A stretch of DNA of 64,000 nucleotides from Paramoeba atlantica (GCA_977017575.1 CDRNVI010000053.1:434001-498000), one strand, 5' to 3'; shown: positions 9,285 through 47,149, counted from the first letter of the stretch. Translations and numbers: made by a program. Notes: generated by a model from the sequence alone, not told the origin.

Positions 9285-10304
9285 ATGATTGCATCGAGCG
9301 CTTTGACTACCCCTCATCGAGATTTCATAAATGACTGTCAAGAGGATGACATTGGCCGATTTCGCGCCACATGCAGCTCAGATGGTACAATAGTCATACA
9401 CCCTCTTGGGGACAACACGAACACAGCGTGCCAAACACTCTTTGGGCACGACGGCCCAGTGTGGAGCATTGCATGGGCACCGATAGCGCTCATATCCAGG
9501 GAACTTTTCCTTGTCTCTGGTGGATACGATGGCCGCGTTATCTTGTGGAAAAATAGCATTCCTGAAACGGGCTTGGGGGCCTTCGAGAAGTGCGATACCG
9601 AAATTTTAAGCGCTGCTGTGAACCGAGTGGCATGGTGTCCTGCAGAGGCGGGATGGCGTCTGGCATGCGCCCTCGTGGATGGCACCATACGCGAGTCCAT
9701 TTGTGAGAACAACAAGTGGGGTATCTTCGCACTTGTGGGAAAGCACGATGCCTCCGTCAGAAGTGTTGCCTGGTGTCCTGTAGTGCCTCGAGCACAGGAA
9801 GTTCCGTGTCCTGTTTTGTGCTCAGGTGGGATGGACGCATGTTTAATGCTGTGGCAAACTACAGGAATTACAGGAAACTACAGGAACTACTGTAATAGAG
9901 GAGAGTGGTTGTGTCTTATTAAGCTACCTCTCGAGAGTCCGATCCATGATATCGGTTGTGCACCGCGTGGTGCCTACGAGCAGTCGATACTTGCCGTTGC
10001 AACACAACAAAAGAGTGTACGAATTTATCATATTAACTTAGAAGATATTTCGATTGCGGATGAGAAAGAAAAGAATTTTTTAGAACAGTTAGCTACACTT
10101 CCTCTGGAAAGTGTACCGTGCGCTGTCTCTTGGTGTCCATTTCAAAATGCATACATGATAGCCGTATCGTTGGACAATGGGAGCGTAGCCGTGTATTGTG
10201 GCACTGAGGATTTCACTAAACTCCATTTTCCGGGGGCATCTATCGTAAAACGTTTACCTACTATGTGGACCGAAACGTCTACCGCGCTTTTGGAAGATCT
10301 ATAA
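9285..10304 (+). CDS. SEC13: Sec13-like WD40 protein (COPII/nuclear pore)
   Basis: TLFGHDGPVWSIAWA...LVSGGYDGRVILWK and AVNRVAWCP...LACALVDG match the Sec13 WD repeats. Confidence 0.75.
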   Translation: MIASSALTTPHRDFINDCQEDDIGRFRATCSSDGTIVIHPLGDNTNTACQTLFGHDGPVWSIAWAPIALISRELFLVSGGYDGRVILWKNSIPETGLGAFEKCDTEILSAAVNRVAWCPAEAGWRLACALVDGTIRESICENNKWGIFALVGKHDASVRSVAWCPVVPRAQEVPCPVLCSGGMDACLMLWQTTGITGNYRNYCNRGEWLCLIKLPLESPIHDIGCAPRGAYEQSILAVATQQKSVRIYHINLEDISIADEKEKNFLEQLATLPLESVPCAVSWCPFQNAYMIAVSLDNGSVAVYCGTEDFTKLHFPGASIVKRLPTMWTETSTALLEDL

Positions 10305-10457
10305 GGGTAATGTTTCGAAACATTTCATGCATTCATGTTCAGATGTTTACAAAAAAAATGGAATTACGTTATCCCTATCGCATTGCCTACCTACGGGACA
10401 TAGTAGATACCCTGTGACATAGGGTATCGAACCATACGTAACCCTTTTACATTTCAC

Positions 10458-11438
10458 ATGTTCCCTATAAAGTTGTCCTCGTCTACTTTCTCCTCCCATG
10501 TACTTCCCCTAATGCCCGCCGTCGACACCCACGTTGGCACCCTCTCCGCGGCCGCCCTACTCTGGACCCCCATCCTCCTCGGCACCCTCGCACCGGCCAC
10601 CTGGCACCCCACCCCCGCGACCGCCTTCCCCCTCCCCTACGCCCTCCCCCTCCTCCCTCTCCTCCTCCTGCTCACCGCCTACCTCGCACGACGTCCCTCC
10701 GGGGAGGGCCTCATGTCCCTCTCCTTTCTTCTGGGTCTATGCACCCAGTGTTACCTCCACCCCACCGCGGAGTACCCCGCCCCTCCCCTTGGGGGGGTGA
10801 ACGTCCCCCCCCGTGCCCCCCCCTCCCCCTCTTTTTCTTTTTTCTCCCCCTCTCTCACGAACGCCCTCCATGCCGTCTCCCCGCTCTACACACTCCTCTC
10901 CGAGCACGGCATCGCGGCCTGGGCCGCCACCGCCGCCCAGCACCCCCGCCGGGTGCTGTGGCTGCTCGCCTGCGTGGGCTTCGGCCTCACCAGCGCCTGG
11001 TTCTGTAAGCGAGCGGACAGGGCCCGGGGTAGGGGGCGCCGGGAGGGGGGGGCCTGGCGCCCACGGTACCCCCTCACGGAGCGGCTCTACCTCGTGCTGC
11101 CGTTTGCGCTGGGGGAGGGTGTGGGGTTGTTCTGGGCGCGCGGCCGCCGGGCGACCGTGGAGGTGCTGGTGGCTATTTTTTTAGGTGAGGCCACGGTGGG
11201 GTTGTTTTTGATGGGGTACCATGCGTTGCGGCACGCCGGGGTGTATGGGGGTGACTTGGTGGGGTGTGCGCGGACGATGCTGCATGCGAGTTTGTGGAAT
11301 CTGTGTGGGGCGGGGTGTGTGGTGGCGCTGAGCTTGCATTTTGTGATACACCCGTTGCTGCACCAGTTGTTTCATAGAAACGTGTTGATTAGCTCGTTTG
11401 GTATTGCATGTGAGCTTATTTTTTATGACATGTTTTGA
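10458..11438 (+). CDS. Hypothetical multi-pass membrane protein
   Basis: 326-aa ORF with about 6-7 hydrophobic segments; no family recognised; lies in a C-to-G skew domain. Confidence 0.55.
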   Translation: MFPIKLSSSTFSSHVLPLMPAVDTHVGTLSAAALLWTPILLGTLAPATWHPTPATAFPLPYALPLLPLLLLLTAYLARRPSGEGLMSLSFLLGLCTQCYLHPTAEYPAPPLGGVNVPPRAPPSPSFSFFSPSLTNALHAVSPLYTLLSEHGIAAWAATAAQHPRRVLWLLACVGFGLTSAWFCKRADRARGRGRREGGAWRPRYPLTERLYLVLPFALGEGVGLFWARGRRATVEVLVAIFLGEATVGLFLMGYHALRHAGVYGGDLVGCARTMLHASLWNLCGAGCVVALSLHFVIHPLLHQLFHRNVLISSFGIACELIFYDMF

Positions 11439-11641
11439 GAGCAGCGGGTGTGGATGGCGTATAGAGGGGGGTGTCGGAAACGGGAAAGGTTGAGAATAGA
11501 ACCCCTTGTATCTTGTATTCTTGTTATCCATAGTCTCCCATGCATGAATGGACGATCCCATGAGGATTGGCCCGCAACATGAAAAAAAAGATTTGAATTA
11601 TTCTTATTCTTCTTTTTAAGCCAATCCACCGTCACCCACCC

Positions 11642-13051
11642 ATGTACCCCCCCTCTCCTCTACCCCTCCTCCTCCTCCTCCTCCTCACCCCCCACCTCCT
11701 CACCCTCCCCACCTCAACCGACCCTCCCCCACCCCACCTCCTCTACAACCCCTTCCCCCTCCCCTGGCCCCCTTCCCCACCACCAAAAACCCACAACCCC
11801 TTCTACCCCCCCACCCGAGCCTGCCCCCACATGTGGGACGGCCCCACCTGCTCCCTCTGCCCCGTTCCCTACACCGGTCTCCACTGCAACACCTGCCGTC
11901 TCCCCCCCTCCCCTACCCTCCCCTACGCCCCCCAACCCTACCCCTACTGCGCCCCCGGCCCCGGGGTCCCCTCCGGGCTGGCCCGGGCGAACCACCTCGA
12001 GGCCACGGCGCGGGTCAACGCGGGGGAGGGGGGGGGTGCGCCCCGGTGTAACCGCACCGAGGTGTGTGGGGACCGGGCGGAGGGGGTGTACTACTGTGGG
12101 GAGCGGCAGGCGTGTGTGTGTGAGGGGTGCACGCAGATGTGGGAGCAGGGGGAGGGGGAGGGGGAGGGGGAGGGGGAGGGGGAGGGGGAGGGGGAGGGGG
12201 AGGGGGAGGGGGAGGGGGAGGGGGAGGGGGGAAGTGGGGGGAGAGTGTGGTGGGGGGTTGAGGGGGGGGGACGGGGGAAGGGGGGAGAGGGAGAGGGGGG
12301 AGAGGGACAGGGGGTTCAGGGGAAGGGGGGGAAGGGTGTTCAGGGGGGGGAGGGACAGGGGGTTCAGGGGAAGGGTGTTCAGGGGAAGGGTGTTCAGGGG
12401 GGGGAGGGACAGGGGGTTCGGGGGAAAGGACAGGGGGTACAGGGACAGGGCGTTCAGGGGAGGGGACAGGGGGGAGAGGGAGTGGGGGTTCAGGGGAGGG
12501 GACAGGAGGGAGAGGGAGTGGGGGTTCAGGGGGAGGGTAAGGGGGAACCGTGGCAGGGACAGGGGGGAGGAGGAGGGGGAGGACGACGCTGTGATGTTTG
12601 TCCATGGCCGTACGCCGGGGAACGGTGTAACCGGTGTGCGGTGCAGGGGAGGGTTTTTCCGTTTTGTGCGGAGGAGAGTTGGGTGGAGTGGGTGGTGGGG
12701 AAGGTGTGGAGTGGGGGGAGGGCGATCCCGGAGAGGTTGCGGTGTGGGACCGTGGAGAGGGAGTGTTATGGGAACGCGAGGAGGGTGTTTTATCATCCCG
12801 GGTTGGGGCATTGTGTGGGGGAGTGTGTGGAGGGGTGGACGGGGAGTCGATGTGAGTACTGTCCAGTGCCGTTTACCGGGGTGAAGTGTGATGGGTGTAT
12901 GGACCCGACACTGCGTTTTCCGGCTTGTTATGAGAGTGAGGAGGAGAATCGAAGGGCGCGACAGCTTTATGCATATCGCAGAACTGCGGTGATTTACCCA
13001 GTAGGGTATTTGTCTGAGGAGGAGGATTCGAGAGGAGAACGAGCCTTCTAG
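11642..13051 (+). CDS. Secreted EGF/laminin-EGF-like Cys-rich protein with a Gly/Glu/Gln repeat linker
   Basis: Leu-rich signal peptide. Repeats CPHMWDGPTCSLCPVPYTGLHCNTC, CDVCPWPYAGERCNRC and CVEGWTGSRCEYCPVPFTGVKCDGC. Confidence 0.7.
   Translation: MYPPSPLPLLLLLLLTPHLLTLPTSTDPPPPHLLYNPFPLPWPPSPPPKTHNPFYPPTRACPHMWDGPTCSLCPVPYTGLHCNTCRLPPSPTLPYAPQPYPYCAPGPGVPSGLARANHLEATARVNAGEGGGAPRCNRTEVCGDRAEGVYYCGERQACVCEGCTQMWEQGEGEGEGEGEGEGEGEGEGEGEGEGEGGSGGRVWWGVEGGGRGKGGEGEGGEGQGVQGKGGKGVQGGEGQGVQGKGVQGKGVQGGEGQGVRGKGQGVQGQGVQGRGQGGEGVGVQGRGQEGEGVGVQGEGKGEPWQGQGGGGGGGRRCDVCPWPYAGERCNRCAVQGRVFPFCAEESWVEWVVGKVWSGGRAIPERLRCGTVERECYGNARRVFYHPGLGHCVGECVEGWTGSRCEYCPVPFTGVKCDGCMDPTLRFPACYESEEENRRARQLYAYRRTAVIYPVGYLSEEEDSRGERAF
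12149..12226 (+). repeat. (GGGGAG)13 perfect tandem repeat encoding (GE)13
   Basis: Counted directly from the sequence. Confidence 0.95.
12290..12560 (+). repeat. Degenerate G-rich minisatellite (GTTCAGGGG/GGACAGGGG units) encoding GQGVQG repeats
   Basis: Repeated gttcagggg and agggacagggg blocks; boundaries approximate. Confidence 0.8.
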
Positions 13052-13230
13052 GTTTGAGCAAGTGGTTGAGCAACGAGTGTTCATAGATTCCGTAGATTGT
13101 AGGTTATTAGTTAGTTTATATTTGCATATGTGTCATCGTATTAAGGGTACAATAAGGAGTTGCGTGTGATGCTTTTTAAACCGCATAAACGAAACTTAAA
13201 TTTGCAATATTCCCAGTACAAGTGTCCTTT

Positions 13231-14034
13231 ATGGATCGCAACTCATCCACCCCGTCACTCAGTGTTGTGATTCCGACCTATCGGGAATGCGAGAACCTTG
13301 AGCCCCTTATTGTTCGTCTATTTGCCTCTTTCCCAGAGAACAGTATCAATACTCCAAAAATTGAAGTCATCGTTGTGGATGACAACAGCCCAGATGGAAC
13401 AGTTGCTGTAATGGAGCAATTGCAAGAACGTTTTCCTGCTGTTCGGCTTATAGTCCGCACGCACGAACGTGGATTAAGTAGTGCAGTACTCCGTGGGTTT
13501 GAGCACACTACGGGGGACATTCTACTTGTTATGGATGCCGACCTGCAGCATCCACCCGAGTTTGTCAAGCACCTATACCGGCCGTTCCTCGAGGACGAAA
13601 ATATTCAGTTCGTTGTGGGAACACGGGAAATTCCACCAAACTCCTCTTGGTCAAACACACGCAAGCTTATCTCAACGTTTGCGACTAGTCTCAGTTATCC
13701 TCTTACGTGTGGACAAATGGCGGATCCGATGACTGGATTTTTCGCCCTACGTCGTTCGAAGTATAATTCGTATCGTGAAGCAGTCAGTGCGGTTGGATAC
13801 AAGATTGCCCTGGAACTGTACGTGAAATGCCATTGTACCCCAAAAGAGACTTCCGAAGTCACATTTCCCTTTGGTGTGCGTCGGGCTGGGGAGAGTAAGC
13901 TATCCGCACGTGTCGTATTTCAGTATCTGCAGCATCTGGCGCAGCTCTACTTATATTCCATGGGGCCACTGTTCGCATTACTTCTGTTGATCATTCTGCT
14001 GATGATTTCCTTGTACGATCTCCAAAAAAAATAG
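13231..14034 (+). CDS. DPM1: Dolichol-phosphate mannosyltransferase (GT2) with C-terminal TM anchor
   Basis: LSVVIPTYRE, VIVVDDNSPDGT, GLSSAVLRGF, VMDADLQHPPE, DPMTGFFA, GESKL and a C-terminal hydrophobic helix. Confidence 0.9.
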   Translation: MDRNSSTPSLSVVIPTYRECENLEPLIVRLFASFPENSINTPKIEVIVVDDNSPDGTVAVMEQLQERFPAVRLIVRTHERGLSSAVLRGFEHTTGDILLVMDADLQHPPEFVKHLYRPFLEDENIQFVVGTREIPPNSSWSNTRKLISTFATSLSYPLTCGQMADPMTGFFALRRSKYNSYREAVSAVGYKIALELYVKCHCTPKETSEVTFPFGVRRAGESKLSARVVFQYLQHLAQLYLYSMGPLFALLLLIILLMISLYDLQKK

Positions 14035-14292
14035 ACTCATCCTTTTATTGGTCTATTTCATGGCAATTTAATCGACACTATTCATTTAGTGTCTAAATTA
14101 GACAAATTAGTTTCGACGAACGACTTCGTTTGACGAATTCTTTTCTGACACATAATTTTATAGAGATGTCCGTGTGCGCATGGACTGAATGATAATGCGT
14201 TGTGAAAAAAAAATTCACAGAATATTCTTTCAAACGTATTCTTCTCTTCCTCTCTTACACGCCCCCATGCTCCCACCCCCCACCCCCTCCCC

Positions 14293-15669
14293 ATGACCCG
14301 ACCTTCCTCCCCCACCACCACCCCACCCCCACCTGAAATCGACTTCTCCGAGACCTGGATCCGTCCCCACACCATCACCGTCGCCCTCCTCGGGGCCGCC
14401 GGGATCTGTCTCCTCCACTACCTCACCCACCTCCCCGACGACCCCCCGTTCCACGCCTCCCACTACGGCGCCGCCCTCCTGGCCTCGGTCGCCGTCTTCC
14501 TGGTCTTCTCCTGCGTCCATCTCCCGGACTCCATGCTTACCCGACCCCACCCCGCGGTCTGGCGCCTTCTCCTCGGGGTCGCGGTGCTCTATCTCATGTT
14601 TATGGTTTTCCTGCTGTTCCTGAATCTCCAGGACGCCCGTCAGGTGTTTGGGTTTCTCGACCCGATGCTGCTGTCCCCCCCAGAGGAGAGGCTCTACGCG
14701 GAGGACTGCAGGCTGTTCCCCGTGGAGGACCCGTACCGGGCGCTACGTGCGTTGCTGGATGAGTTTTTCGTGGCCCACGCGCTGGGGTACTGGGTGAAGA
14801 TGATTGTGCTGCGGGATGGGTGGTTGGTGTTTGCGGTAAGTCTGGGGTTTGAGGTGCTGGAGTGTACGTTTCAGTACTGGTTGCCGAATTTTAAGGAGTG
14901 TTGGTGGGATCACCTGCTGTTGGATGTTTTTGGGTGCAACGCGTTGGGGATGGTGCTGGGATATTACACGTTGAGGTATTTAAACGCGAGGGAGTATAAC
15001 TGGGTGAAGCTGGGTGAGGTCAAGGGGTTGGGGAAAAAAGCAAGGCGTATTGCGCTGCAGTTTACCCCACGTTCGTGGCATATCCAGCAGTGGGCGTTCT
15101 TTAACAGCCCCGCACATACCTTGGATGTTACTTTTGTTCTTTTTGTGTTCCTACTCCAGGAGTCAAACTGTTTCTTCGCAAAGCATATACTGTGGATGCC
15201 AAGTACGCATCCCTTGGTCGTCGGTCGGGTCGTTATGTGGGGATTTCTTGCTCTTCCCTCGATTCGGGAGTTTTATTGCTACCGTCGTGAAAGCACGGGA
15301 AAGAAAAACCGACGACTAGGAACCACCGCCTGGGTGTGTAGTCTGGCGCTCTTTTTTGAGACACTGGTTATTCTGAAATACGCCCGACAAGGAAACTACT
15401 TTGCCGAAAACCCTTTGCCTCATCATGTCAAATTCATGTGGTCCGTGGCGCTTGTGTCATGGATTATTTGGTTTGTTGTACGGTATTGGAGGTTTTGGCA
15501 GTGTGGTACCCATAGCATAACACGGCGCGTTTGTTGTTGGATTCTATATGGGATTCCTTTTGTGGCATTGGCTATGCTGTGCGCTATTGCAACACCCGGG
15601 ATTGAGCCTATTTCGGATCCCTGTAAAATATTTGTGGGATATCTTTCCGGTGTACCCGTCTTACATTGA
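14293..15669 (+). CDS. Base-exchange phosphatidylserine synthase (PTDSS/PSS family)
   Basis: RPHPAVWR, DEFFVAHALGYWVK, LPNFKECWWDHLLLDVFGCNALG; multi-TM. Confidence 0.92.
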   Translation: MTRPSSPTTTPPPPEIDFSETWIRPHTITVALLGAAGICLLHYLTHLPDDPPFHASHYGAALLASVAVFLVFSCVHLPDSMLTRPHPAVWRLLLGVAVLYLMFMVFLLFLNLQDARQVFGFLDPMLLSPPEERLYAEDCRLFPVEDPYRALRALLDEFFVAHALGYWVKMIVLRDGWLVFAVSLGFEVLECTFQYWLPNFKECWWDHLLLDVFGCNALGMVLGYYTLRYLNAREYNWVKLGEVKGLGKKARRIALQFTPRSWHIQQWAFFNSPAHTLDVTFVLFVFLLQESNCFFAKHILWMPSTHPLVVGRVVMWGFLALPSIREFYCYRRESTGKKNRRLGTTAWVCSLALFFETLVILKYARQGNYFAENPLPHHVKFMWSVALVSWIIWFVVRYWRFWQCGTHSITRRVCCWILYGIPFVALAMLCAIATPGIEPISDPCKIFVGYLSGVPVLH

Positions 15670-15843
15670 GATGAACAATAAACTGTTTGTACGATCCACC
15701 TAGCTTGATGTGGAAAATCTCTGATGTTGATTGGAGTATCGTTTCGACCTATAGTAGTATTATTCGAGACTTTCTGATTTTTGGGCTTAAAAATAGTCAT
15801 ATTTCTGTGAGGGCATTTTCTTATCTTTTCTTTACATCATTTC

Positions 15844-16509
15844 ATGTCGGCACCTGCAGGAGGCAGTGACGTCGCTGCCACTTTTAAACTAATTCTTGTC
15901 GGAGATGGAAGTACCGGGAAGACAACCTTTGTGAAACGGCACAAGACTGGTGAGTTTGAAAAACGCTACATCGCTACCGTTGGCGTTGATGTTCATCCTT
16001 TGACGTTTCATACTAATCGTGGGGTTATTTGCTTCAACGTCTGGGACACTGCTGGCCAAGAGCGCTTTGGGGGACTCCGCGATGGGTACTACATTGGGGG
16101 AAACTGTGCCATCATTATGTTCGACGTTACCTCGCGTTCAACGTATAAGAACGTACCGAACTGGCACCGGGACATCGTTCGTGTGTGTGATCCAATTCCT
16201 ATGGTTCTGGTAGGCAACAAAGTGGACTGTTTGGAACGTCAGGTCAAGGCAAAACAGATTACTTTCCACCGCAAGAAAAATTTGCAGTACTACGATGTCA
16301 GCGCGAAAAGCAACTATAACTTTGAAAAGCCGTTCTTATGGCTGGCGAAGCGACTGGCGAATGACCCGAATCTGACTTTTGTGGAGGCAAGTGCGTTGAA
16401 GCCCCCAATGATATCCATGGATGCCGCGATGGTGCAAGGTATGGAGCGTGACCTCCAGGAGGCCTCAGCTATGCCTCTACCCGACGATGATGATGACGGA
16501 ACTTTTTAA
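15844..16509 (+). CDS. RAN: GTP-binding nuclear protein Ran
   Basis: [47 protein letters not shown] and an acidic C-terminal tail. Confidence 0.98.
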
Positions 16510-27431: not shown

Positions 27432-27850
27432 AAAGTAGTTCGTTCTGCAAAGCTTTTCTTCGTTTTATTTTCCTTCGATATTTCAGTTCAGTTTGTTAAT
27501 CTCGCTTTACGTAAATATAGCTTTCTTGCCTTGCATGAAGTATTTAGTGCGTCACTTAACCTTTAATTTCTTGGTTAAAGTGAGTAAGAATTGTGCGCAA
27601 TATTTTGATTGATTTTATACATGTCCCTACACAGTCTCATATGCCATAATTCACTGTTCATATCCTATTTACACTCGCTATTCATACCCGATTGATTGAA
27701 TTTCAAGCAGATCTGAAAAGCCAACAAATTATTTACTTTTGATCGAAACCAACAAACTAGGCTGTTTAATGATCAATATTATTGGTGAAAATATTCTAAT
27801 AAACTTAATCAGCAGAATACCTTGTCATTACACAATATATAACTACAAAT

Positions 27851-28489
27851 ATGAGCACCGAAATTCAACCCTCTACCCAGGTTAATTCCACCAGCACCCT
27901 TCCCACCCTTCCAGAGATGGACCCTGTTGCGGCTACTGTGGAAATCCGACGGTACGAGTCTGGGCTACCCACCTTGAAGGTCTACATGGATGAGCGCAAC
28001 CAGTACCTGTTTCTCCCTTCTGAGCACGTGTACGGCACCGAGGGCGCGGAACGGTTCCTACGCGCGGCGCCGGGAACCGCACAGAATCCGGTGCTATGCC
28101 GAACCCTCGCTCGGGGTTATCTCTGCCCTCGTGGGGCAACCTGTGGGTTTGTTCACGCGGACTTGGCTGCAGCAGAGTTGAGCGCGGAGTACCGTAAAAC
28201 AGATGTCCATCGGAATGATGCCATTGAGGTGGGATATCTGCGCTATCCGACGCTACCAGAGGGAACTACGCTTCCGGTGCCGCAGAAAGGGAATGAGGCA
28301 TTCACCATATCGCTTCACTCCGAAATGCTTTACAAAACAAAGGGAGGAGAGAATTTATATCGGATGTACACGCAAAGTGGGGCTCCCGCAGGGCCTCGAC
28401 GCTACACACGGTGTAATTTTTTCGAAATGAAAAAGATTTGTCATAAAGGGACGGATTGTGGTCATCTACACGTCGCGTATGACGAATGA
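27851..28489 (+). CDS. Two-finger CCCH zinc-finger RNA-binding protein (kinetoplastid ZC3H-like)
   Basis: Two exact C-x8-C-x5-C-x3-H motifs: CRTLARGYLCPRGATCGFVH and CNFFEMKKICHKGTDCGHLH. Confidence 0.85.
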   Translation: MSTEIQPSTQVNSTSTLPTLPEMDPVAATVEIRRYESGLPTLKVYMDERNQYLFLPSEHVYGTEGAERFLRAAPGTAQNPVLCRTLARGYLCPRGATCGFVHADLAAAELSAEYRKTDVHRNDAIEVGYLRYPTLPEGTTLPVPQKGNEAFTISLHSEMLYKTKGGENLYRMYTQSGAPAGPRRYTRCNFFEMKKICHKGTDCGHLHVAYDE

Positions 28490-45898: not shown

Positions 45899-47149
45899 AT
45901 GCCGAATCTCCATGTATCTCTGTACAGAACTGTGCTCAAGAAAGCGAACTCAATTTTGCGTGCATACAACGGAAACTTACACTGGGCGACAAAATCCATC
46001 TTTGGTAATGCCATTCATCCTCTCTATTGGAACACCATAGGCTCCACCCCACGTGACATCATACGACACTATTTCACTAAAGGCCTCCCCCCCGGTCTCC
46101 CTCCCCGTACCCGCTCCCTCATTGTCTTCGAACTCCTCAAACGCATGAACCTCGCCGTCGCGGACCCCTCCTCCGAGCGCAGTCTCCTTCACCCCATCTC
46201 CCTTCGTCGTGGCGACGCCCCCCCCTTCCACGTCACCAGCTACCAGGAAGACGCCCTCCCCCCACCCCCTCGACTCACCCTCCGTGGCGACCCCTTCTGG
46301 GCCATCCAACTCTGCTGCCCCTCCGTGTGCTTCCCCTGGAAGGAGGAGTTCACCTGGGTCAATCCCCCCCACCCCCTCCCCCCCTCTTCCCCCCCCTCCT
46401 CCCCCAAACTCCTCTCCACCTCAACGATCACCACCACCGCGAAAGTCGAGGTCGCGGTCACCACTCGACTCATCTGCGCCCATAAGGAAACCCACAACCA
46501 CGTGTTTGAGTACCGCATCAAAATCACCAACACGGGGAGCCCCGGGCGCGACCCCACCGTCCAGGTCCTCTCCCGGCACTGGTACTTCCTGGACTGGCAC
46601 TGCGAGACGCTGGTGGAGGTGGTGGGGAAAGGGGTGCTGGGGCAGTTCCCGTGGCTCCCCCCCGGCGAGAGCCACACCTACACCTCCGGGACGGATCTAA
46701 GCTCCCGGCATGGCGTGATGAAGGGGCTGTTGCAGGTGGCACGGTTTGCGTGCCCTCCCCCGCGTGGGGGAGGGGGGGGGACAGCCGTGGAGGAGGAGGA
46801 GGGGGGGATACCGCCTGAGGGGGATGTCGTGGAGGCGTTGGAAAGGGAGCTTACAGCAAAGGCGTCTGTGGTGCAAGGGGGTGTGAAAGGGGGGGAACAA
46901 GAGAAGGGGGAAACGGGAAACAAGGGGGTGGATGATAAAAAGCGGGAAAAAAGGGAGAGAGGTAAAGAAAAAAGTCATGGTGTAAAACCCGACGTGTCGA
47001 AGTGTTCTGAAAGTGTATGCTCGGACGTTCCTGTATCGAAGAATGAGAAAAAAGTTGAAGCACCTAGCGATTCGCAACCTTCTCAACCTCCGGAAACGTT
47101 CATTGATATGATTGACGTTTTCGTTGCACCGACTTTATTTTCCGGTTAA
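45899..47149 (+). CDS. ApaG (DUF525) domain protein with an N-terminal LYR-like motif
   Basis: FEYRIKITN...VQVLSRHW...EVVGKGVLGQFPWLPPGESHTYTSGT...GVMKG; N-terminal VSLYRTVLK. Confidence 0.85.
   Translation: MPNLHVSLYRTVLKKANSILRAYNGNLHWATKSIFGNAIHPLYWNTIGSTPRDIIRHYFTKGLPPGLPPRTRSLIVFELLKRMNLAVADPSSERSLLHPISLRRGDAPPFHVTSYQEDALPPPPRLTLRGDPFWAIQLCCPSVCFPWKEEFTWVNPPHPLPPSSPPSSPKLLSTSTITTTAKVEVAVTTRLICAHKETHNHVFEYRIKITNTGSPGRDPTVQVLSRHWYFLDWHCETLVEVVGKGVLGQFPWLPPGESHTYTSGTDLSSRHGVMKGLLQVARFACPPPRGGGGGTAVEEEEGGIPPEGDVVEALERELTAKASVVQGGVKGGEQEKGETGNKGVDDKKREKRERGKEKSHGVKPDVSKCSESVCSDVPVSKNEKKVEAPSDSQPSQPPETFIDMIDVFVAPTLFSG

What the first reader, a model, noticed from the sequence alone, without database searches (positions are those of the whole stretch)
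10480..15040. Three adjacent ~1-kb domains where the + strand flips from extreme C-richness to extreme G-richness
Seen (boundaries by eye): C-rich ~10480-11000 then G-rich ~11020-11490; C-rich ~11625-11990 then G-rich ~12010-12910; C-rich ~14250-14650 then G/T-rich ~14740-15040. DPM1 lies between them with ordinary composition. The bias spills into non-coding flanks (G-rich after the stop at 11438; ccccaccccctcccc before ATG 14293), so it is a DNA-level property. Each domain is symmetric: both strands read C-rich 5' then G-rich 3' around a centre. Established: this sign of skew inversion marks bidirectional replication origins and divergent transcription/R-loop sites, and G-runs form G-quadruplexes. 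Inference: these may be a distinct class of intragenic origin or Pol II entry elements inside a polycistronic unit. I do not know of a description of this pattern.
Basis: partly seen in the sequence, partly recalled or inferred. Interest (0 to 1): 0.8.

Follow-up and report, generated by a model that had tools for sequence, protein, structure and literature searches.

The report
C-to-G skew-flip islands inside genes
In this kinetoplastid-type genome, stretches of about 1 kb that start at the 5' ends of some genes have had nearly every free base changed first to C and then to G without breaking the proteins. The signature is real and I found no description of it; its cause is unproven but looks tied to the transcript rather than to replication origins.

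Summary
The window holds four bipolar islands: the three reported and a fourth in the ApaG gene at 46020-46980. GC reaches 0.65-0.78 against a window mean of 0.44. GC skew runs from -0.5/-0.9 to +0.4/+0.9, while the background sd is 0.12.

Contigs from three separate samples carry the islands in the same context. Amino-acid composition does not explain the skew. At four-fold sites C is 63-72% in left arms and G is 61-65% in right arms, against a background near 20%, and this holds at codons of conserved residues. Phosphatidylserine synthase, ApaG and Sec23 stay colinear with their homologues.

GC-biased gene conversion is rejected, because on the G-rich arm T-versus-C choice is not shifted towards C. 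There is no shared motif, no specific hairpin and no universal G4.

Four more islands lie on another contig of the same assembly. All eight are confined to one gene. The C-rich edge sits at the gene's 5' end in seven of eight (p about 5e-7). Adjacent AT-rich intergenic cores are untouched. Five related loci show none.

This argues against plain replication origins and for a transcript-linked, strand-asymmetric process, whose mechanism is inferred. The scan has noted such islands on many other pieces of this genome.

The parts
10470..10950 (.). Island 1, C-rich left arm (C 0.50, G 0.16)
   Evidence: third codon positions are 55-77% C
10951..11495 (.). Island 1, G-rich right arm, including 57 nt of non-coding sequence after the stop
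   Evidence: G3 is 47-62%
10458..11438 (+). ORF A, a 326-aa predicted membrane protein with no recognised family; it is entirely covered by island 1 and the flip lies exactly at mid-ORF
11501..11619 (.). Intergenic core between islands 1 and 2, with ordinary AT-rich composition (GC 36%) although it lies between two extreme arms
11620..11998 (.). Island 2, C-rich left arm (C 0.58, G 0.10) with a sharp left edge 16-22 nt before the ATG
11999..13175 (.). Island 2, G-rich right arm (G 0.55); it fades through the 3' end of the ORF into a G/T-rich 3' flank
12150..12590 (+). In-frame G-rich low-complexity expansion (GE and GQGVQGKG-type repeats, about 150 aa); it is absent from both paralogues and varies in length between strains
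11642..13051 (+). ORF B, a 469-aa secreted-type cysteine-rich protein with EGF-like CxxCPxP[YF]xGxxC motifs in both arms; a real gene with paralogues
13222..14034 (+). DPM1-type glycosyltransferase with ordinary composition, lying between islands 2 and 3
14250..14681 (.). Island 3, C-rich left arm with a sharp left edge about 45-50 nt before the ATG
14682..15080 (.). Island 3, G/T-rich right arm that fades out in mid-gene
14293..15669 (+). Phosphatidylserine synthase (PF03034), colinear with homologues; every invariant residue of the alignment is kept inside the island
46020..46589 (.). Island 4, C-rich left arm with a gradual edge 120-170 nt inside the ORF
46590..46980 (.). Island 4, G-rich right arm
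45899..47149 (+). ApaG-domain protein; the DUF525/ApaG domain (residues 195-280) spans the flip centre

Best explanation
The islands are footprints of a lineage-specific, strand-asymmetric process that acts in place on existing genes and is bounded by the gene's transcript. From the 5' end of the mRNA footprint to about +220 to +690 nt, every site not held by protein function is driven to C on the sense strand, which means to G on the template strand. Over the next 400-600 nt or more, every free site is driven to G on the sense strand. Purifying selection keeps the proteins intact, so the signal sits in synonymous sites, tolerant residues, UTR flanks and in-frame low-complexity expansions. All of this is shown.

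The following is inferred. The strand that becomes G-rich is the one left single-stranded on each side of the flip point. That would be the sense strand downstream, through R-loops of the sense transcript. Upstream it would be the antisense strand, through short antisense transcripts that start at the flip and stop at the intergenic region. Base loss on the exposed strand, followed by insertion of C opposite the abasic site (the Rev1/Pol zeta 'C rule'), turns A, C or T into G on that strand and leaves G unchanged, so G is a sink. G-richness in turn stabilises R-loops. In kinetoplastids G/T-rich coding-strand elements themselves start Pol II transcription. The process would therefore reinforce itself and give sharp, saturated islands that behave like miniature divergent transcription-start regions embedded in genes.
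For: The islands are real DNA, held by three samples. The shift is strongest at synonymous sites. At four-fold sites the background is A27 C21 G20 T32 %, the left arms are A10 C63 G15 T12 %, and the right arms are A11 C16 G61 T11 %. It holds at codons of conserved residues in PSS, where C3 is 64% on the left and G3 is 56% on the right. All three other bases feed the favoured base, and there is no dependence on neighbouring bases, as expected for lesion bypass that inserts one fixed nucleotide. On right arms, T-versus-C choice moves slightly towards T (66% against 58%, p 0.012), as expected for an exposed strand and opposite to gBGC. All 8 islands are confined to a single gene. The left edge lies -141 to +40 nt from the ATG in 7 of 8 (binomial p 4.7e-7). 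The intergenic core 11501-11619 is untouched, and tandem paralogues 275 nt apart differ from extreme to weak. This transcript-delimited behaviour points to an RNA-linked process. The arms meet in-silico R-loop criteria: at least 40% G over at least 200 nt, and 96% of all G-cluster motifs in the window fall in islands. From the literature: Rev1/Pol zeta insert C opposite AP sites, giving T>G on the non-transcribed strand, and this rises when R-loops accumulate (PMC6063437). GT-rich 210-416 bp elements drive directional Pol II initiation and H2A.Z deposition in T. brucei (PMC5579346). GC skew marks R-loop-forming CpG-island promoters (PMC3787257).
Against: No RNA run holds the locus. Antisense transcripts, R-loops, H2A.Z and the true mRNA ends are therefore all unobserved. 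The model does not by itself explain why the flip lies within about 700 nt of the gene's 5' end. The pattern is not perfectly mirror-symmetric: sense-strand A is depleted in both arms (left-arm R-sites A 37% against 61%, p 6e-4). In T. brucei, R-loops map mainly to intergenic regions and do not follow GC skew (PMC6294496). The presence or loss of Rev1, UNG, AP endonuclease or RNase H in this genome was not examined. Only 8 islands were examined, three of them in paralogues, and edges were partly set by eye.
Confidence: 0.4

Rival explanations
1. The islands are fixed replication origins. The skew jump would be the mutational footprint of bidirectional initiation, with the leading strand G-rich, as at bacterial origins and at human constitutive origins.
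For: The polarity (C-rich then G-rich) is that of an origin S-jump. Initiation-linked mutagenesis is reported to raise local GC, create skews and create G4s at human origins (PMC9645720). A spacing of one per several kb is compatible with the many low-efficiency initiation sites of Leishmania (PMC12890776). The scan notes many such islands across this genome.
Against: Origins should not respect gene ends. All 8 islands stay within one gene, 7 of 8 start at the gene's 5' end (p about 5e-7), and AT-rich intergenic cores next to saturated arms are untouched. Three islands within 5 kb, and adjacent tandem genes that each carry their own island, are odd for origins. In Leishmania the initiation sites are AT-rich and depleted from coding sequence (PMC12890776). 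Sense-strand-specific A depletion in both arms is not expected from replication.
Confidence: 0.17
2. The islands are recurrent double-strand-break or recombination hotspots inside genes. Resection on both sides would be followed by error-prone fill-in synthesis that over-inserts G in the newly made strands, possibly with the gene's own transcript as template or bridge, which would set the sharp 5' limit.
For: The geometry fits. The new strand is the minus strand on the left and the plus strand on the right, and it is the new strand that would be G-rich. Arm length (about 400-600 nt) resembles resection or conversion tracts. The islands carry repeat expansions, strain indels and a homopolymer frameshift. 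The X2 strain shows mosaic divergence around the locus.
Against: No polymerase is known to me that over-inserts G opposite all templates (own knowledge). With the Rev1 C rule acting on resected 3' overhangs, the predicted polarity is the reverse of what is seen. Classical GC-biased conversion is excluded. Divergence between strains is not higher in island 1 (about 1.0%) than in the flank (about 1.8%).
Confidence: 0.13
3. The pattern is selected at the level of the mRNA or of a DNA function. For example, GC3-rich 'optimal' codons might raise mRNA level, with C and G kept apart to avoid local hairpins. Or the skew might be selected because it sets chromatin or Pol II entry.
For: The islands match the presumed mature-mRNA footprint, UTR flanks included, and spare intergenic cores. 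Codon choice controls mRNA level in trypanosomes (PMC5896880, title and abstract only). The per-site bias (an odds shift of about 10-fold) is of a size that weak selection could give in a large population (inference).
Against: Codon optimality does not explain UTR involvement, partial coverage of long genes, the obligatory C-then-G order, or the absence of islands from orthologues in five related loci. An all-C design would avoid structure better than a flip. As RNA the arms pair with each other heavily (55-64% of predicted pairs are cross-arm), which should hinder translation, and the pairing is no better than in arm-shuffled controls. G or C runs are not in clear excess over synonymous shuffles.
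Confidence: 0.12
4. The islands are hotspots of ordinary GC-biased gene conversion, like the 5' GC3 gradients of grass genes.
For: GC3 is high and anchored at gene 5' ends. In left arms the disfavoured purine sites also shift mildly from A to G.
Against: gBGC is blind to strand and cannot create a skew of +/-0.9. C-to-G and G-to-C transversions are strongly directional. On right arms the T/C choice at two-fold sites is T 66% against 58% in the background, the wrong direction.
Confidence: 0.04
5. The pattern is an artefact, either a chimeric or mis-basecalled assembly or a side effect of proline/glycine-rich protein composition.
For: Gene callers fragment these regions. Low-complexity repeats break the short-read contigs. 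There is a possible homopolymer error in a C-run.
Against: Three samples, including a diverged strain and a probable Hi-C short-read library, carry the islands in the same context. Every invariant column of the PSS alignment, which includes the window's own protein, is kept inside the island, which random miscalls would not allow. Four-fold sites carry the strongest bias.
Confidence: 0.02

Closest known systems
GC-skewed CpG-island promoters that form R-loops (bidirectional class), and the strand asymmetry at the 5' ends of human genes (Ginno et al. 2013, PMC3787257; Polak and Arndt 2008 and 2009, cited there)
   Same: GC-rich islands of about 1 kb. The skew is negative upstream and positive downstream of a start point, is limited to roughly the first kb, and is linked to single-stranded exposure of the non-template strand.
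   Different: Here the flip lies inside coding sequence of a unidirectional polycistronic unit, not at a promoter between genes. The skew is far stronger (up to 0.9). It overwrites codon choice, and the upstream arm ends at the gene's own 5' end. No start site has been shown.
GT-rich dispersed Pol II promoters and the G-over-C, T-over-A skew at divergent strand-switch regions of trypanosomatids (Wedel et al. 2017, PMC5579346)
   Same: The same phylogenetic neighbourhood. In T. brucei, G(T)-rich tracts of 200-400 bp on the coding strand are enough for directional initiation and H2A.Z deposition. A back-to-back pair has the polarity seen here.
   Different: The known elements lie at the starts of transcription units, between genes. 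These lie within genes, several per 10-60 kb, in one long same-strand gene array. Only some right arms are T-rich as well as G-rich.
Replication-origin skew jumps (S-jumps) and initiation-linked mutagenesis at human constitutive origins (Murat et al. 2022, PMC9645720)
   Same: An upward GC-skew jump with a local rise in GC, thought to be produced by mutation at a fixed initiation site.
   Different: Origin jumps are weak and are not tied to gene ends. These islands are saturated, confined to single genes and anchored at 5' ends.
Transcription-associated AP-site bypass by Rev1/Pol zeta in yeast (Owiti et al. 2018, PMC6063437)
   Same: It gives base changes towards G on the non-transcribed strand (T>G, C>G), enhanced by R-loops. 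This is the only known chemistry I can name that makes G a sink on one strand.
   Different: It is known as a laboratory mutation spectrum at reporter genes, not as a force that reshapes genome composition. Its action in this organism is pure inference.
5'-to-3' GC3 gradients of grass genes, attributed to GC-biased gene conversion (own knowledge, not checked in the library)
   Same: A GC3-rich zone anchored at gene 5' ends, present in only a subset of genes.
   Different: As far as I know the grass gradients involve no obligatory C-then-G strand flip. The test for gBGC fails here.

Membership tests
Replication-origin skew jump | Skew switches from C-rich to G-rich (and from A-rich to T-rich) in the 5'-to-3' direction at the initiation point | tested here: met
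   The GC skew flips with this sign at all 8 islands. The AT component is only partly mirror-symmetric.
Replication-origin skew jump | Position set by replication and so independent of gene boundaries and gene polarity | tested here: not met
   8 of 8 islands are confined to one gene. 7 of 8 left edges lie -141 to +40 nt from an ATG (p 4.7e-7). The flip is never beyond 0.63 of gene length.
Replication-origin skew jump | Mapped initiation of DNA synthesis at the centre | not testable with these tools
   No replication data are available for this organism.
GC-skewed R-loop promoter (CpG-island type) | G-rich non-template strand with G clusters followed by at least 40% G over at least 200 nt (in-silico R-loop-forming sequence) | tested here: met
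   Only the islands meet the 40% criterion in 64 kb. 206 of 214 plus-strand and 129 of 135 minus-strand G-cluster motifs lie in islands.
GC-skewed R-loop promoter (CpG-island type) | A transcription start at the flip, with RNA-DNA hybrids over the skewed arm | not testable with these tools
   The only RNA-type run offered does not hold the locus.
Kinetoplastid GT-rich Pol II start region | G/T-rich tract of 200-400 bp on the coding strand | tested here: inconclusive
   The right arms hold 39-55% G. T is enriched in islands 1 and 3 but not in islands 2 and 4.
Kinetoplastid GT-rich Pol II start region | Located at the start of a polycistronic unit or at a strand switch | tested here: not met
   All islands lie inside genes of a single same-strand array spanning the whole 64 kb.
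GC-biased gene conversion hotspot | Weak-to-strong bias acting equally on both strands, with no C/G skew | tested here: not met
   Right arms: T/C two-fold sites are T 66% against a background of 58%. Directional C<->G transversions occur at four-fold sites.
G-quadruplex element (origin G-rich repeated element type) | Canonical G4 motifs on the G-rich strand of each arm | tested here: not met
   The PSS island has no G3+N1-7 motifs in either arm, and the ApaG right arm has none. Runs are about as expected from synonymous shuffles.
Inverted-repeat, cruciform or mRNA hairpin element | Arms complementary beyond what their composition gives | tested here: not met
   Arm complementarity has z 1.6 (island 1) and -0.3 (island 3). 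The high z in islands 2 and 4 comes from simple repeats. Cross-arm pairing equals that of arm-shuffled controls.
Low-complexity protein coding bias | Skew explained by amino-acid composition | tested here: not met
   The bias is strongest at four-fold sites and at codons of conserved residues, and is present in UTR flanks.

The most novel reading that the evidence does not exclude
This lineage of early-branching kinetoplastids has a previously undescribed, transcript-delimited hypermutation regime. An RNA-guided process (R-loop or RNA-templated) would rewrite the first kilobase of selected genes, first towards C and then towards G, up to saturation. It would create self-reinforcing intragenic divergent initiation zones, and it would act as a new engine of protein low-complexity expansion and gene divergence.
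Probability: 0.25. Interest if true: 0.9.

Novelty: new variant of a known kind. Interest (0 to 1): 0.8.

Why it matters
Local strand-asymmetry jumps are used across biology to infer where replication or transcription starts, but they are normally weak and lie between genes. Here the same sign of asymmetry is driven to saturation inside conserved housekeeping genes. It is bounded by the gene's own ends and is absent from the nearest sequenced relatives. If the cause is mutational, this is a natural experiment. It would show how far a strand-specific repair or bypass bias can reshape coding sequence while selection holds the protein, and how such a bias spawns proline-rich and glycine/glutamate-rich insertions. 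If the cause is functional, it would reveal intragenic Pol II or replication entry sites in polycistronic genomes, where start signals are poorly understood. There is also a practical point: gene predictors fail in these regions. PSS was called 117 residues short, and ORFs A and B were fragmented. Annotations of such genomes will therefore systematically miss or truncate island genes.

Tried and rejected
(1) Amino-acid composition as the cause: rejected by codon-position and conserved-residue analysis.
(2) Assembly or sequencing artefact: rejected by contigs from three samples.
(3) Insertion of foreign or mobile DNA: rejected, because PSS, ApaG and Sec23 are colinear with homologues and domain models across the islands.
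(4) A shared sequence motif at the centres: no 9-mer is shared by three or more centres.
(5) A designed inverted repeat or hairpin: rejected.
(6) Selection for G-runs or G4s beyond composition: only a weak and inconsistent excess over synonymous-codon shuffles, and no dependence on neighbouring bases.
(7) gBGC: rejected.
(8) Islands at the orthologous loci of relatives: none in about 20 kb around PSS in Perkinsela CCAP 1560/4, in two Perkinsela-like ENA genomes, or in the syntenic L005.
(9) RNA evidence: the single RNA-type run does not hold the locus.
(10) Homologues of ORF A: none by Pfam or Atlas. The word-based search for the ORF B C-terminus was blank, but the exhaustive search found paralogues.
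(11) Using the weak-island paralogue to polarise substitutions: not interpretable as direction, because that paralogue has its own island with a different flip point.
(12) Literature: no paper found that describes such islands in kinetoplastids.

Full report
OBSERVATION. Island 1 runs from about 10470 to 11495, island 2 from about 11620 to 13175, and island 3 from about 14250 to 15080. The flip centres, taken as cumulative-skew minima, are at 10950, 11998 and 14681. GC reaches 0.70-0.78 against a window mean of 0.44, and GC skew reaches -0.90 and +0.90. Outside the islands the skew has mean 0.006 and sd 0.117 and never exceeds -0.41 or +0.32. A fourth island of the same form lies at 46020-46980, with its centre at 46589. 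These four are the only places in 64 kb with at least 40% G or C over 200 nt, and 96% of all G-cluster motifs on either strand fall inside them. DPM1, which lies between islands 2 and 3, is ordinary.

IS IT REAL DNA? The window is contig ctg3970l of ENA assembly ERZ24900291. Logan contigs from three samples hold the islands. X1 is identical to the window. X2 is a strain about 1.3% diverged. In X2 a single 2.5-kb contig joins the normal flank, island 1, the intergenic core and the left arm of island 2, and a 14-kb contig joins the right arm of island 2, DPM1, island 3 and the sequence beyond. X4 gives short contigs whose loose ends carry GATC, which I infer to be a Hi-C short-read library. Every invariant column of the PSS alignment, which includes the window's own protein, is kept inside the island. 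Random miscalls would not allow that. An artefact is excluded.

WHAT ORGANISM AND WHICH GENES. All ORFs of more than 180 aa lie on the + strand, forming one polycistronic array, and there are no tRNAs. The PSS protein is closest to that of Perkinsela sp. CCAP 1560/4 (53% identity), then to two Perkinsela-like ENA genomes (50%) and a free-living prokinetoplastid transcriptome (49%). The genome is therefore an early-branching, kinetoplastid-type one. Island 3 covers the first 60% of phosphatidylserine synthase, which aligns colinearly with ten homologues. Island 4 spans the ApaG domain. Island 1 covers all of ORF A, a membrane protein with no recognised family. Island 2 covers all of ORF B, a cysteine-rich secreted-type protein. 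ORF B is a real gene: an exhaustive search found two short paralogues (48% and 39% identity over the C-terminal 150 residues) and many giant repeat proteins with the same module.

NOT AMINO-ACID COMPOSITION AND NOT AN INSERTION. Third codon positions are 55-85% C in left arms and 52-92% G in right arms, with A3 near 0-5%. Pooled over eight islands, four-fold sites read A10 C63 G15 T12 % on the left and A11 C16 G61 T11 % on the right, against a background of A27 C21 G20 T32 %. In PSS, codons of residues conserved in at least 6 of 9 homologues show C3 of 64% on the left and G3 of 56% on the right. The identity of the protein to its homologues is not lower inside the island than outside. The island is therefore an in-place recoding held in check by purifying selection. 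Where the protein tolerates change, the bias also shapes residues: Pro/Leu/Ser/Thr on the left and Gly/Glu/Arg/Val/Trp on the right. It also produces in-frame low-complexity expansions. One example is the block of about 150 residues of GE and GQGVQGKG-type repeats at 12150-12590, which both paralogues lack and which varies in length between strains.

THE SUBSTITUTION PATTERN. All three other bases feed the favoured base, transversions included. The chance of C3 or G3 does not depend on neighbouring bases. G and C runs are roughly what synonymous-codon shuffles give, and the PSS island has no canonical G4 motif at all. At two-fold pyrimidine-ending codons, T is 25% in left arms against 58% in the background, but 66% in right arms (p 0.012). 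At purine-ending codons, A is 23% in right arms against 61% in the background, and 37% in left arms (p 6e-4). Two conclusions follow. First, this is not GC-biased gene conversion, since on the G-rich arm C is not favoured over T. Second, the pattern is nearly but not perfectly mirror-symmetric, because sense-strand A is depleted in both arms. There is no shared motif at the centres. The arms are not specifically complementary. As RNA the two arms would pair heavily, but no more than arm-shuffled controls do.

THE NEW FINDING: ISLANDS ARE BOUND TO GENES. The ORF B paralogues lie in tandem on another contig of the same assembly, ctg3990l. In 31.6 kb that contig carries four more islands. One lies at the 5' end of Sec23, whose zinc finger and trunk domains are intact. 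One lies at the 5' end of a 563-aa gene. One is extreme and covers paralogue 2. One is weak and covers paralogue 3, only 275 nt away. Across the eight islands, none crosses an intergenic region. The chance of confinement for one randomly placed island is about 0.28-0.50. The C-rich edge lies between -141 and +40 nt of the ATG in seven of eight, where 0.094 is expected by chance, giving a binomial p of 4.7e-7. The flip lies +224 to +690 nt from the ATG and never beyond 0.63 of the gene's length. Where an arm reaches a gene end its edge is sharp. The 119-nt intergenic core at 11501-11619 keeps 36% GC although it lies between two saturated arms. Where an arm ends inside a gene it fades gradually, as in the PSS and ApaG genes. 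These statistics have limits: eight islands, three of them in paralogues, with edges partly set by eye.

DISTRIBUTION. About 20 kb around the PSS orthologue was examined in Perkinsela CCAP 1560/4 (two assemblies), in two Perkinsela-like genomes, and in a fifth relative that shares the WD40-PSS-Ran gene order. None shows any island. The scan's own notes list many 'skew-switch islands inside genes' on other pieces of this genome. I verified this only on ctg3990l.

MECHANISM. What is shown is a strand-specific drive that is transcript-delimited and anchored at 5' ends. It pushes bases to C and then to G on the sense strand, it acts in place, and it is specific to this lineage. What follows is inferred. 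A process that respects gene ends and gene polarity is more likely linked to RNA than to replication or to random breaks. The only chemistry I can name that turns A, C and T alike into G on one strand is base loss on an exposed strand followed by insertion of C opposite the abasic site by Rev1/Pol zeta. In yeast this gives T>G on the non-transcribed strand and is enhanced when R-loops accumulate (PMC6063437). If the sense strand is exposed downstream of the flip by sense R-loops, and the antisense strand is exposed upstream by short antisense transcripts that end at the intergenic region, the observed polarity follows. G-rich non-template strands favour R-loops (PMC3787257). In T. brucei, 210-416 bp GT-rich coding-strand elements are enough for directional Pol II initiation and H2A.Z deposition (PMC5579346). 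The process could therefore reinforce itself, which would explain the saturation, the sharp edges and the all-or-little differences between neighbouring genes. I put this at about 0.4. It does not explain why the flip sits within about 700 nt of the 5' end. T. brucei R-loops are mainly intergenic and unrelated to GC skew (PMC6294496). No RNA or chromatin data exist here.

RIVALS.
- Replication-origin footprints share the polarity and have a human precedent (PMC9645720), but they are contradicted by the gene-bound placement (0.17).
- Break hotspots with G-biased fill-in synthesis fit the geometry and the local instability, but they lack a known polymerase bias, and the C rule predicts the opposite polarity (0.13).
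- Selection on the mRNA or on a DNA function fits the mRNA footprint, but not the UTR involvement, the obligatory order of the arms or the absence from orthologues (0.12).
- gBGC (0.04) and artefact (0.02) are contradicted by direct tests.

COMPARISON AND NOVELTY. The closest known things are the following:
- GC-skewed bidirectional CpG-island promoters
- the GT-rich start regions and strand-switch skews of trypanosomatids
- origin S-jumps
The islands share the sign of the skew and the approximate scale with all three. They differ in four ways: they are intragenic in a same-strand gene array, they are saturated (skew up to 0.9), they are bounded by the gene's ends, and they overwrite codon choice. 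Searches of the paper library found no description of such islands in kinetoplastids. I class this as a new variant of a known kind (a local strand-asymmetry jump at a presumed initiation site), with a real chance that the underlying process is new.

VERDICT. The 'origin' reading is weakened by the gene-bound anatomy. The 'Pol II entry / divergent transcription / R-loop' reading is the best lead but is untested. Interest 0.8.

Noticed in passing
L009:15345-16448 (ENA ERZ24900291 ctg3990l): Paralogue 2 of ORF B reads in two frames. The N-terminal part (from the ATG at 15345) and the called gene (from 15747) are offset by one base within a run of C near 15665-15672. This is either a homopolymer error in a low-coverage long-read assembly or a real frameshift inside an island.
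   Followed up: partly
window 10458-13051 and 14293-14643; L004 gene calls: The automatic gene calls for this contig truncate PSS to 341 aa, skipping the C-rich N-terminal 117 residues. They also break ORFs A and B into short fragments on both strands. Islands defeat gene predictors. Long antisense ORFs such as 11714-13084 (-) are by-products of composition that is poor in stop codons.
   Followed up: partly
window 9285-15669 compared with L003:8030-11347 and L006:6688-11344: In the two Perkinsela-like relatives the DPM1-PSS pair starts at a divergent strand switch; in L003 the gene across the switch matches the window's WD40 gene, in L006 that gene was not matched. In the window, and in L005, the WD40 gene lies on the same strand as PSS. 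In the window ORFs A and B lie between the WD40 gene and DPM1. The cluster of three islands therefore lies where relatives have a transcription-unit start.
   Followed up: partly
window 9300-11845 compared with 12508-15290 (run X2): The X2 strain differs from the window at about 1.3-1.8% of sites in 9300-11845 (contig depth 20.6). It is identical over 12508-15290 (contig depth 54.2). This suggests heterozygous haplotypes with a nearby switch to identity, from loss of heterozygosity or recombination.
   Followed up: no
window 11811, 11900, 12471-12508: Length differences between strains inside island 2: a 15-nt CCA-repeat insertion, an 18-nt deletion and a 36-nt skip in the G-rich repeats. The island arms are prone to indels.
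   Followed up: no
window 11642-13051; L009:15345-17598; proteins P0060-P0066: ORF B belongs to a family of cysteine-rich modules (CxxCPxP[YF]xGxxC, EGF-like). It occurs as small proteins with two to three modules in this assembly and as giant proteins with up to 59 matched stretches (5351 aa) elsewhere. No Pfam family matches it.
   Followed up: partly
window 27601-27900: The only other 300-nt window with skew below -0.35 has low GC (0.33) and no G-rich partner. It is not an island.
   Followed up: no
L005:12321-12995 compared with window 15844-16509: The Ran GTPase is 94% identical between the window and relative L005, whereas the neighbouring PSS, WD40 and 281-aa genes are only 30-44% identical. 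The relatives are deeply diverged and only the most constrained genes stay close.
   Followed up: no
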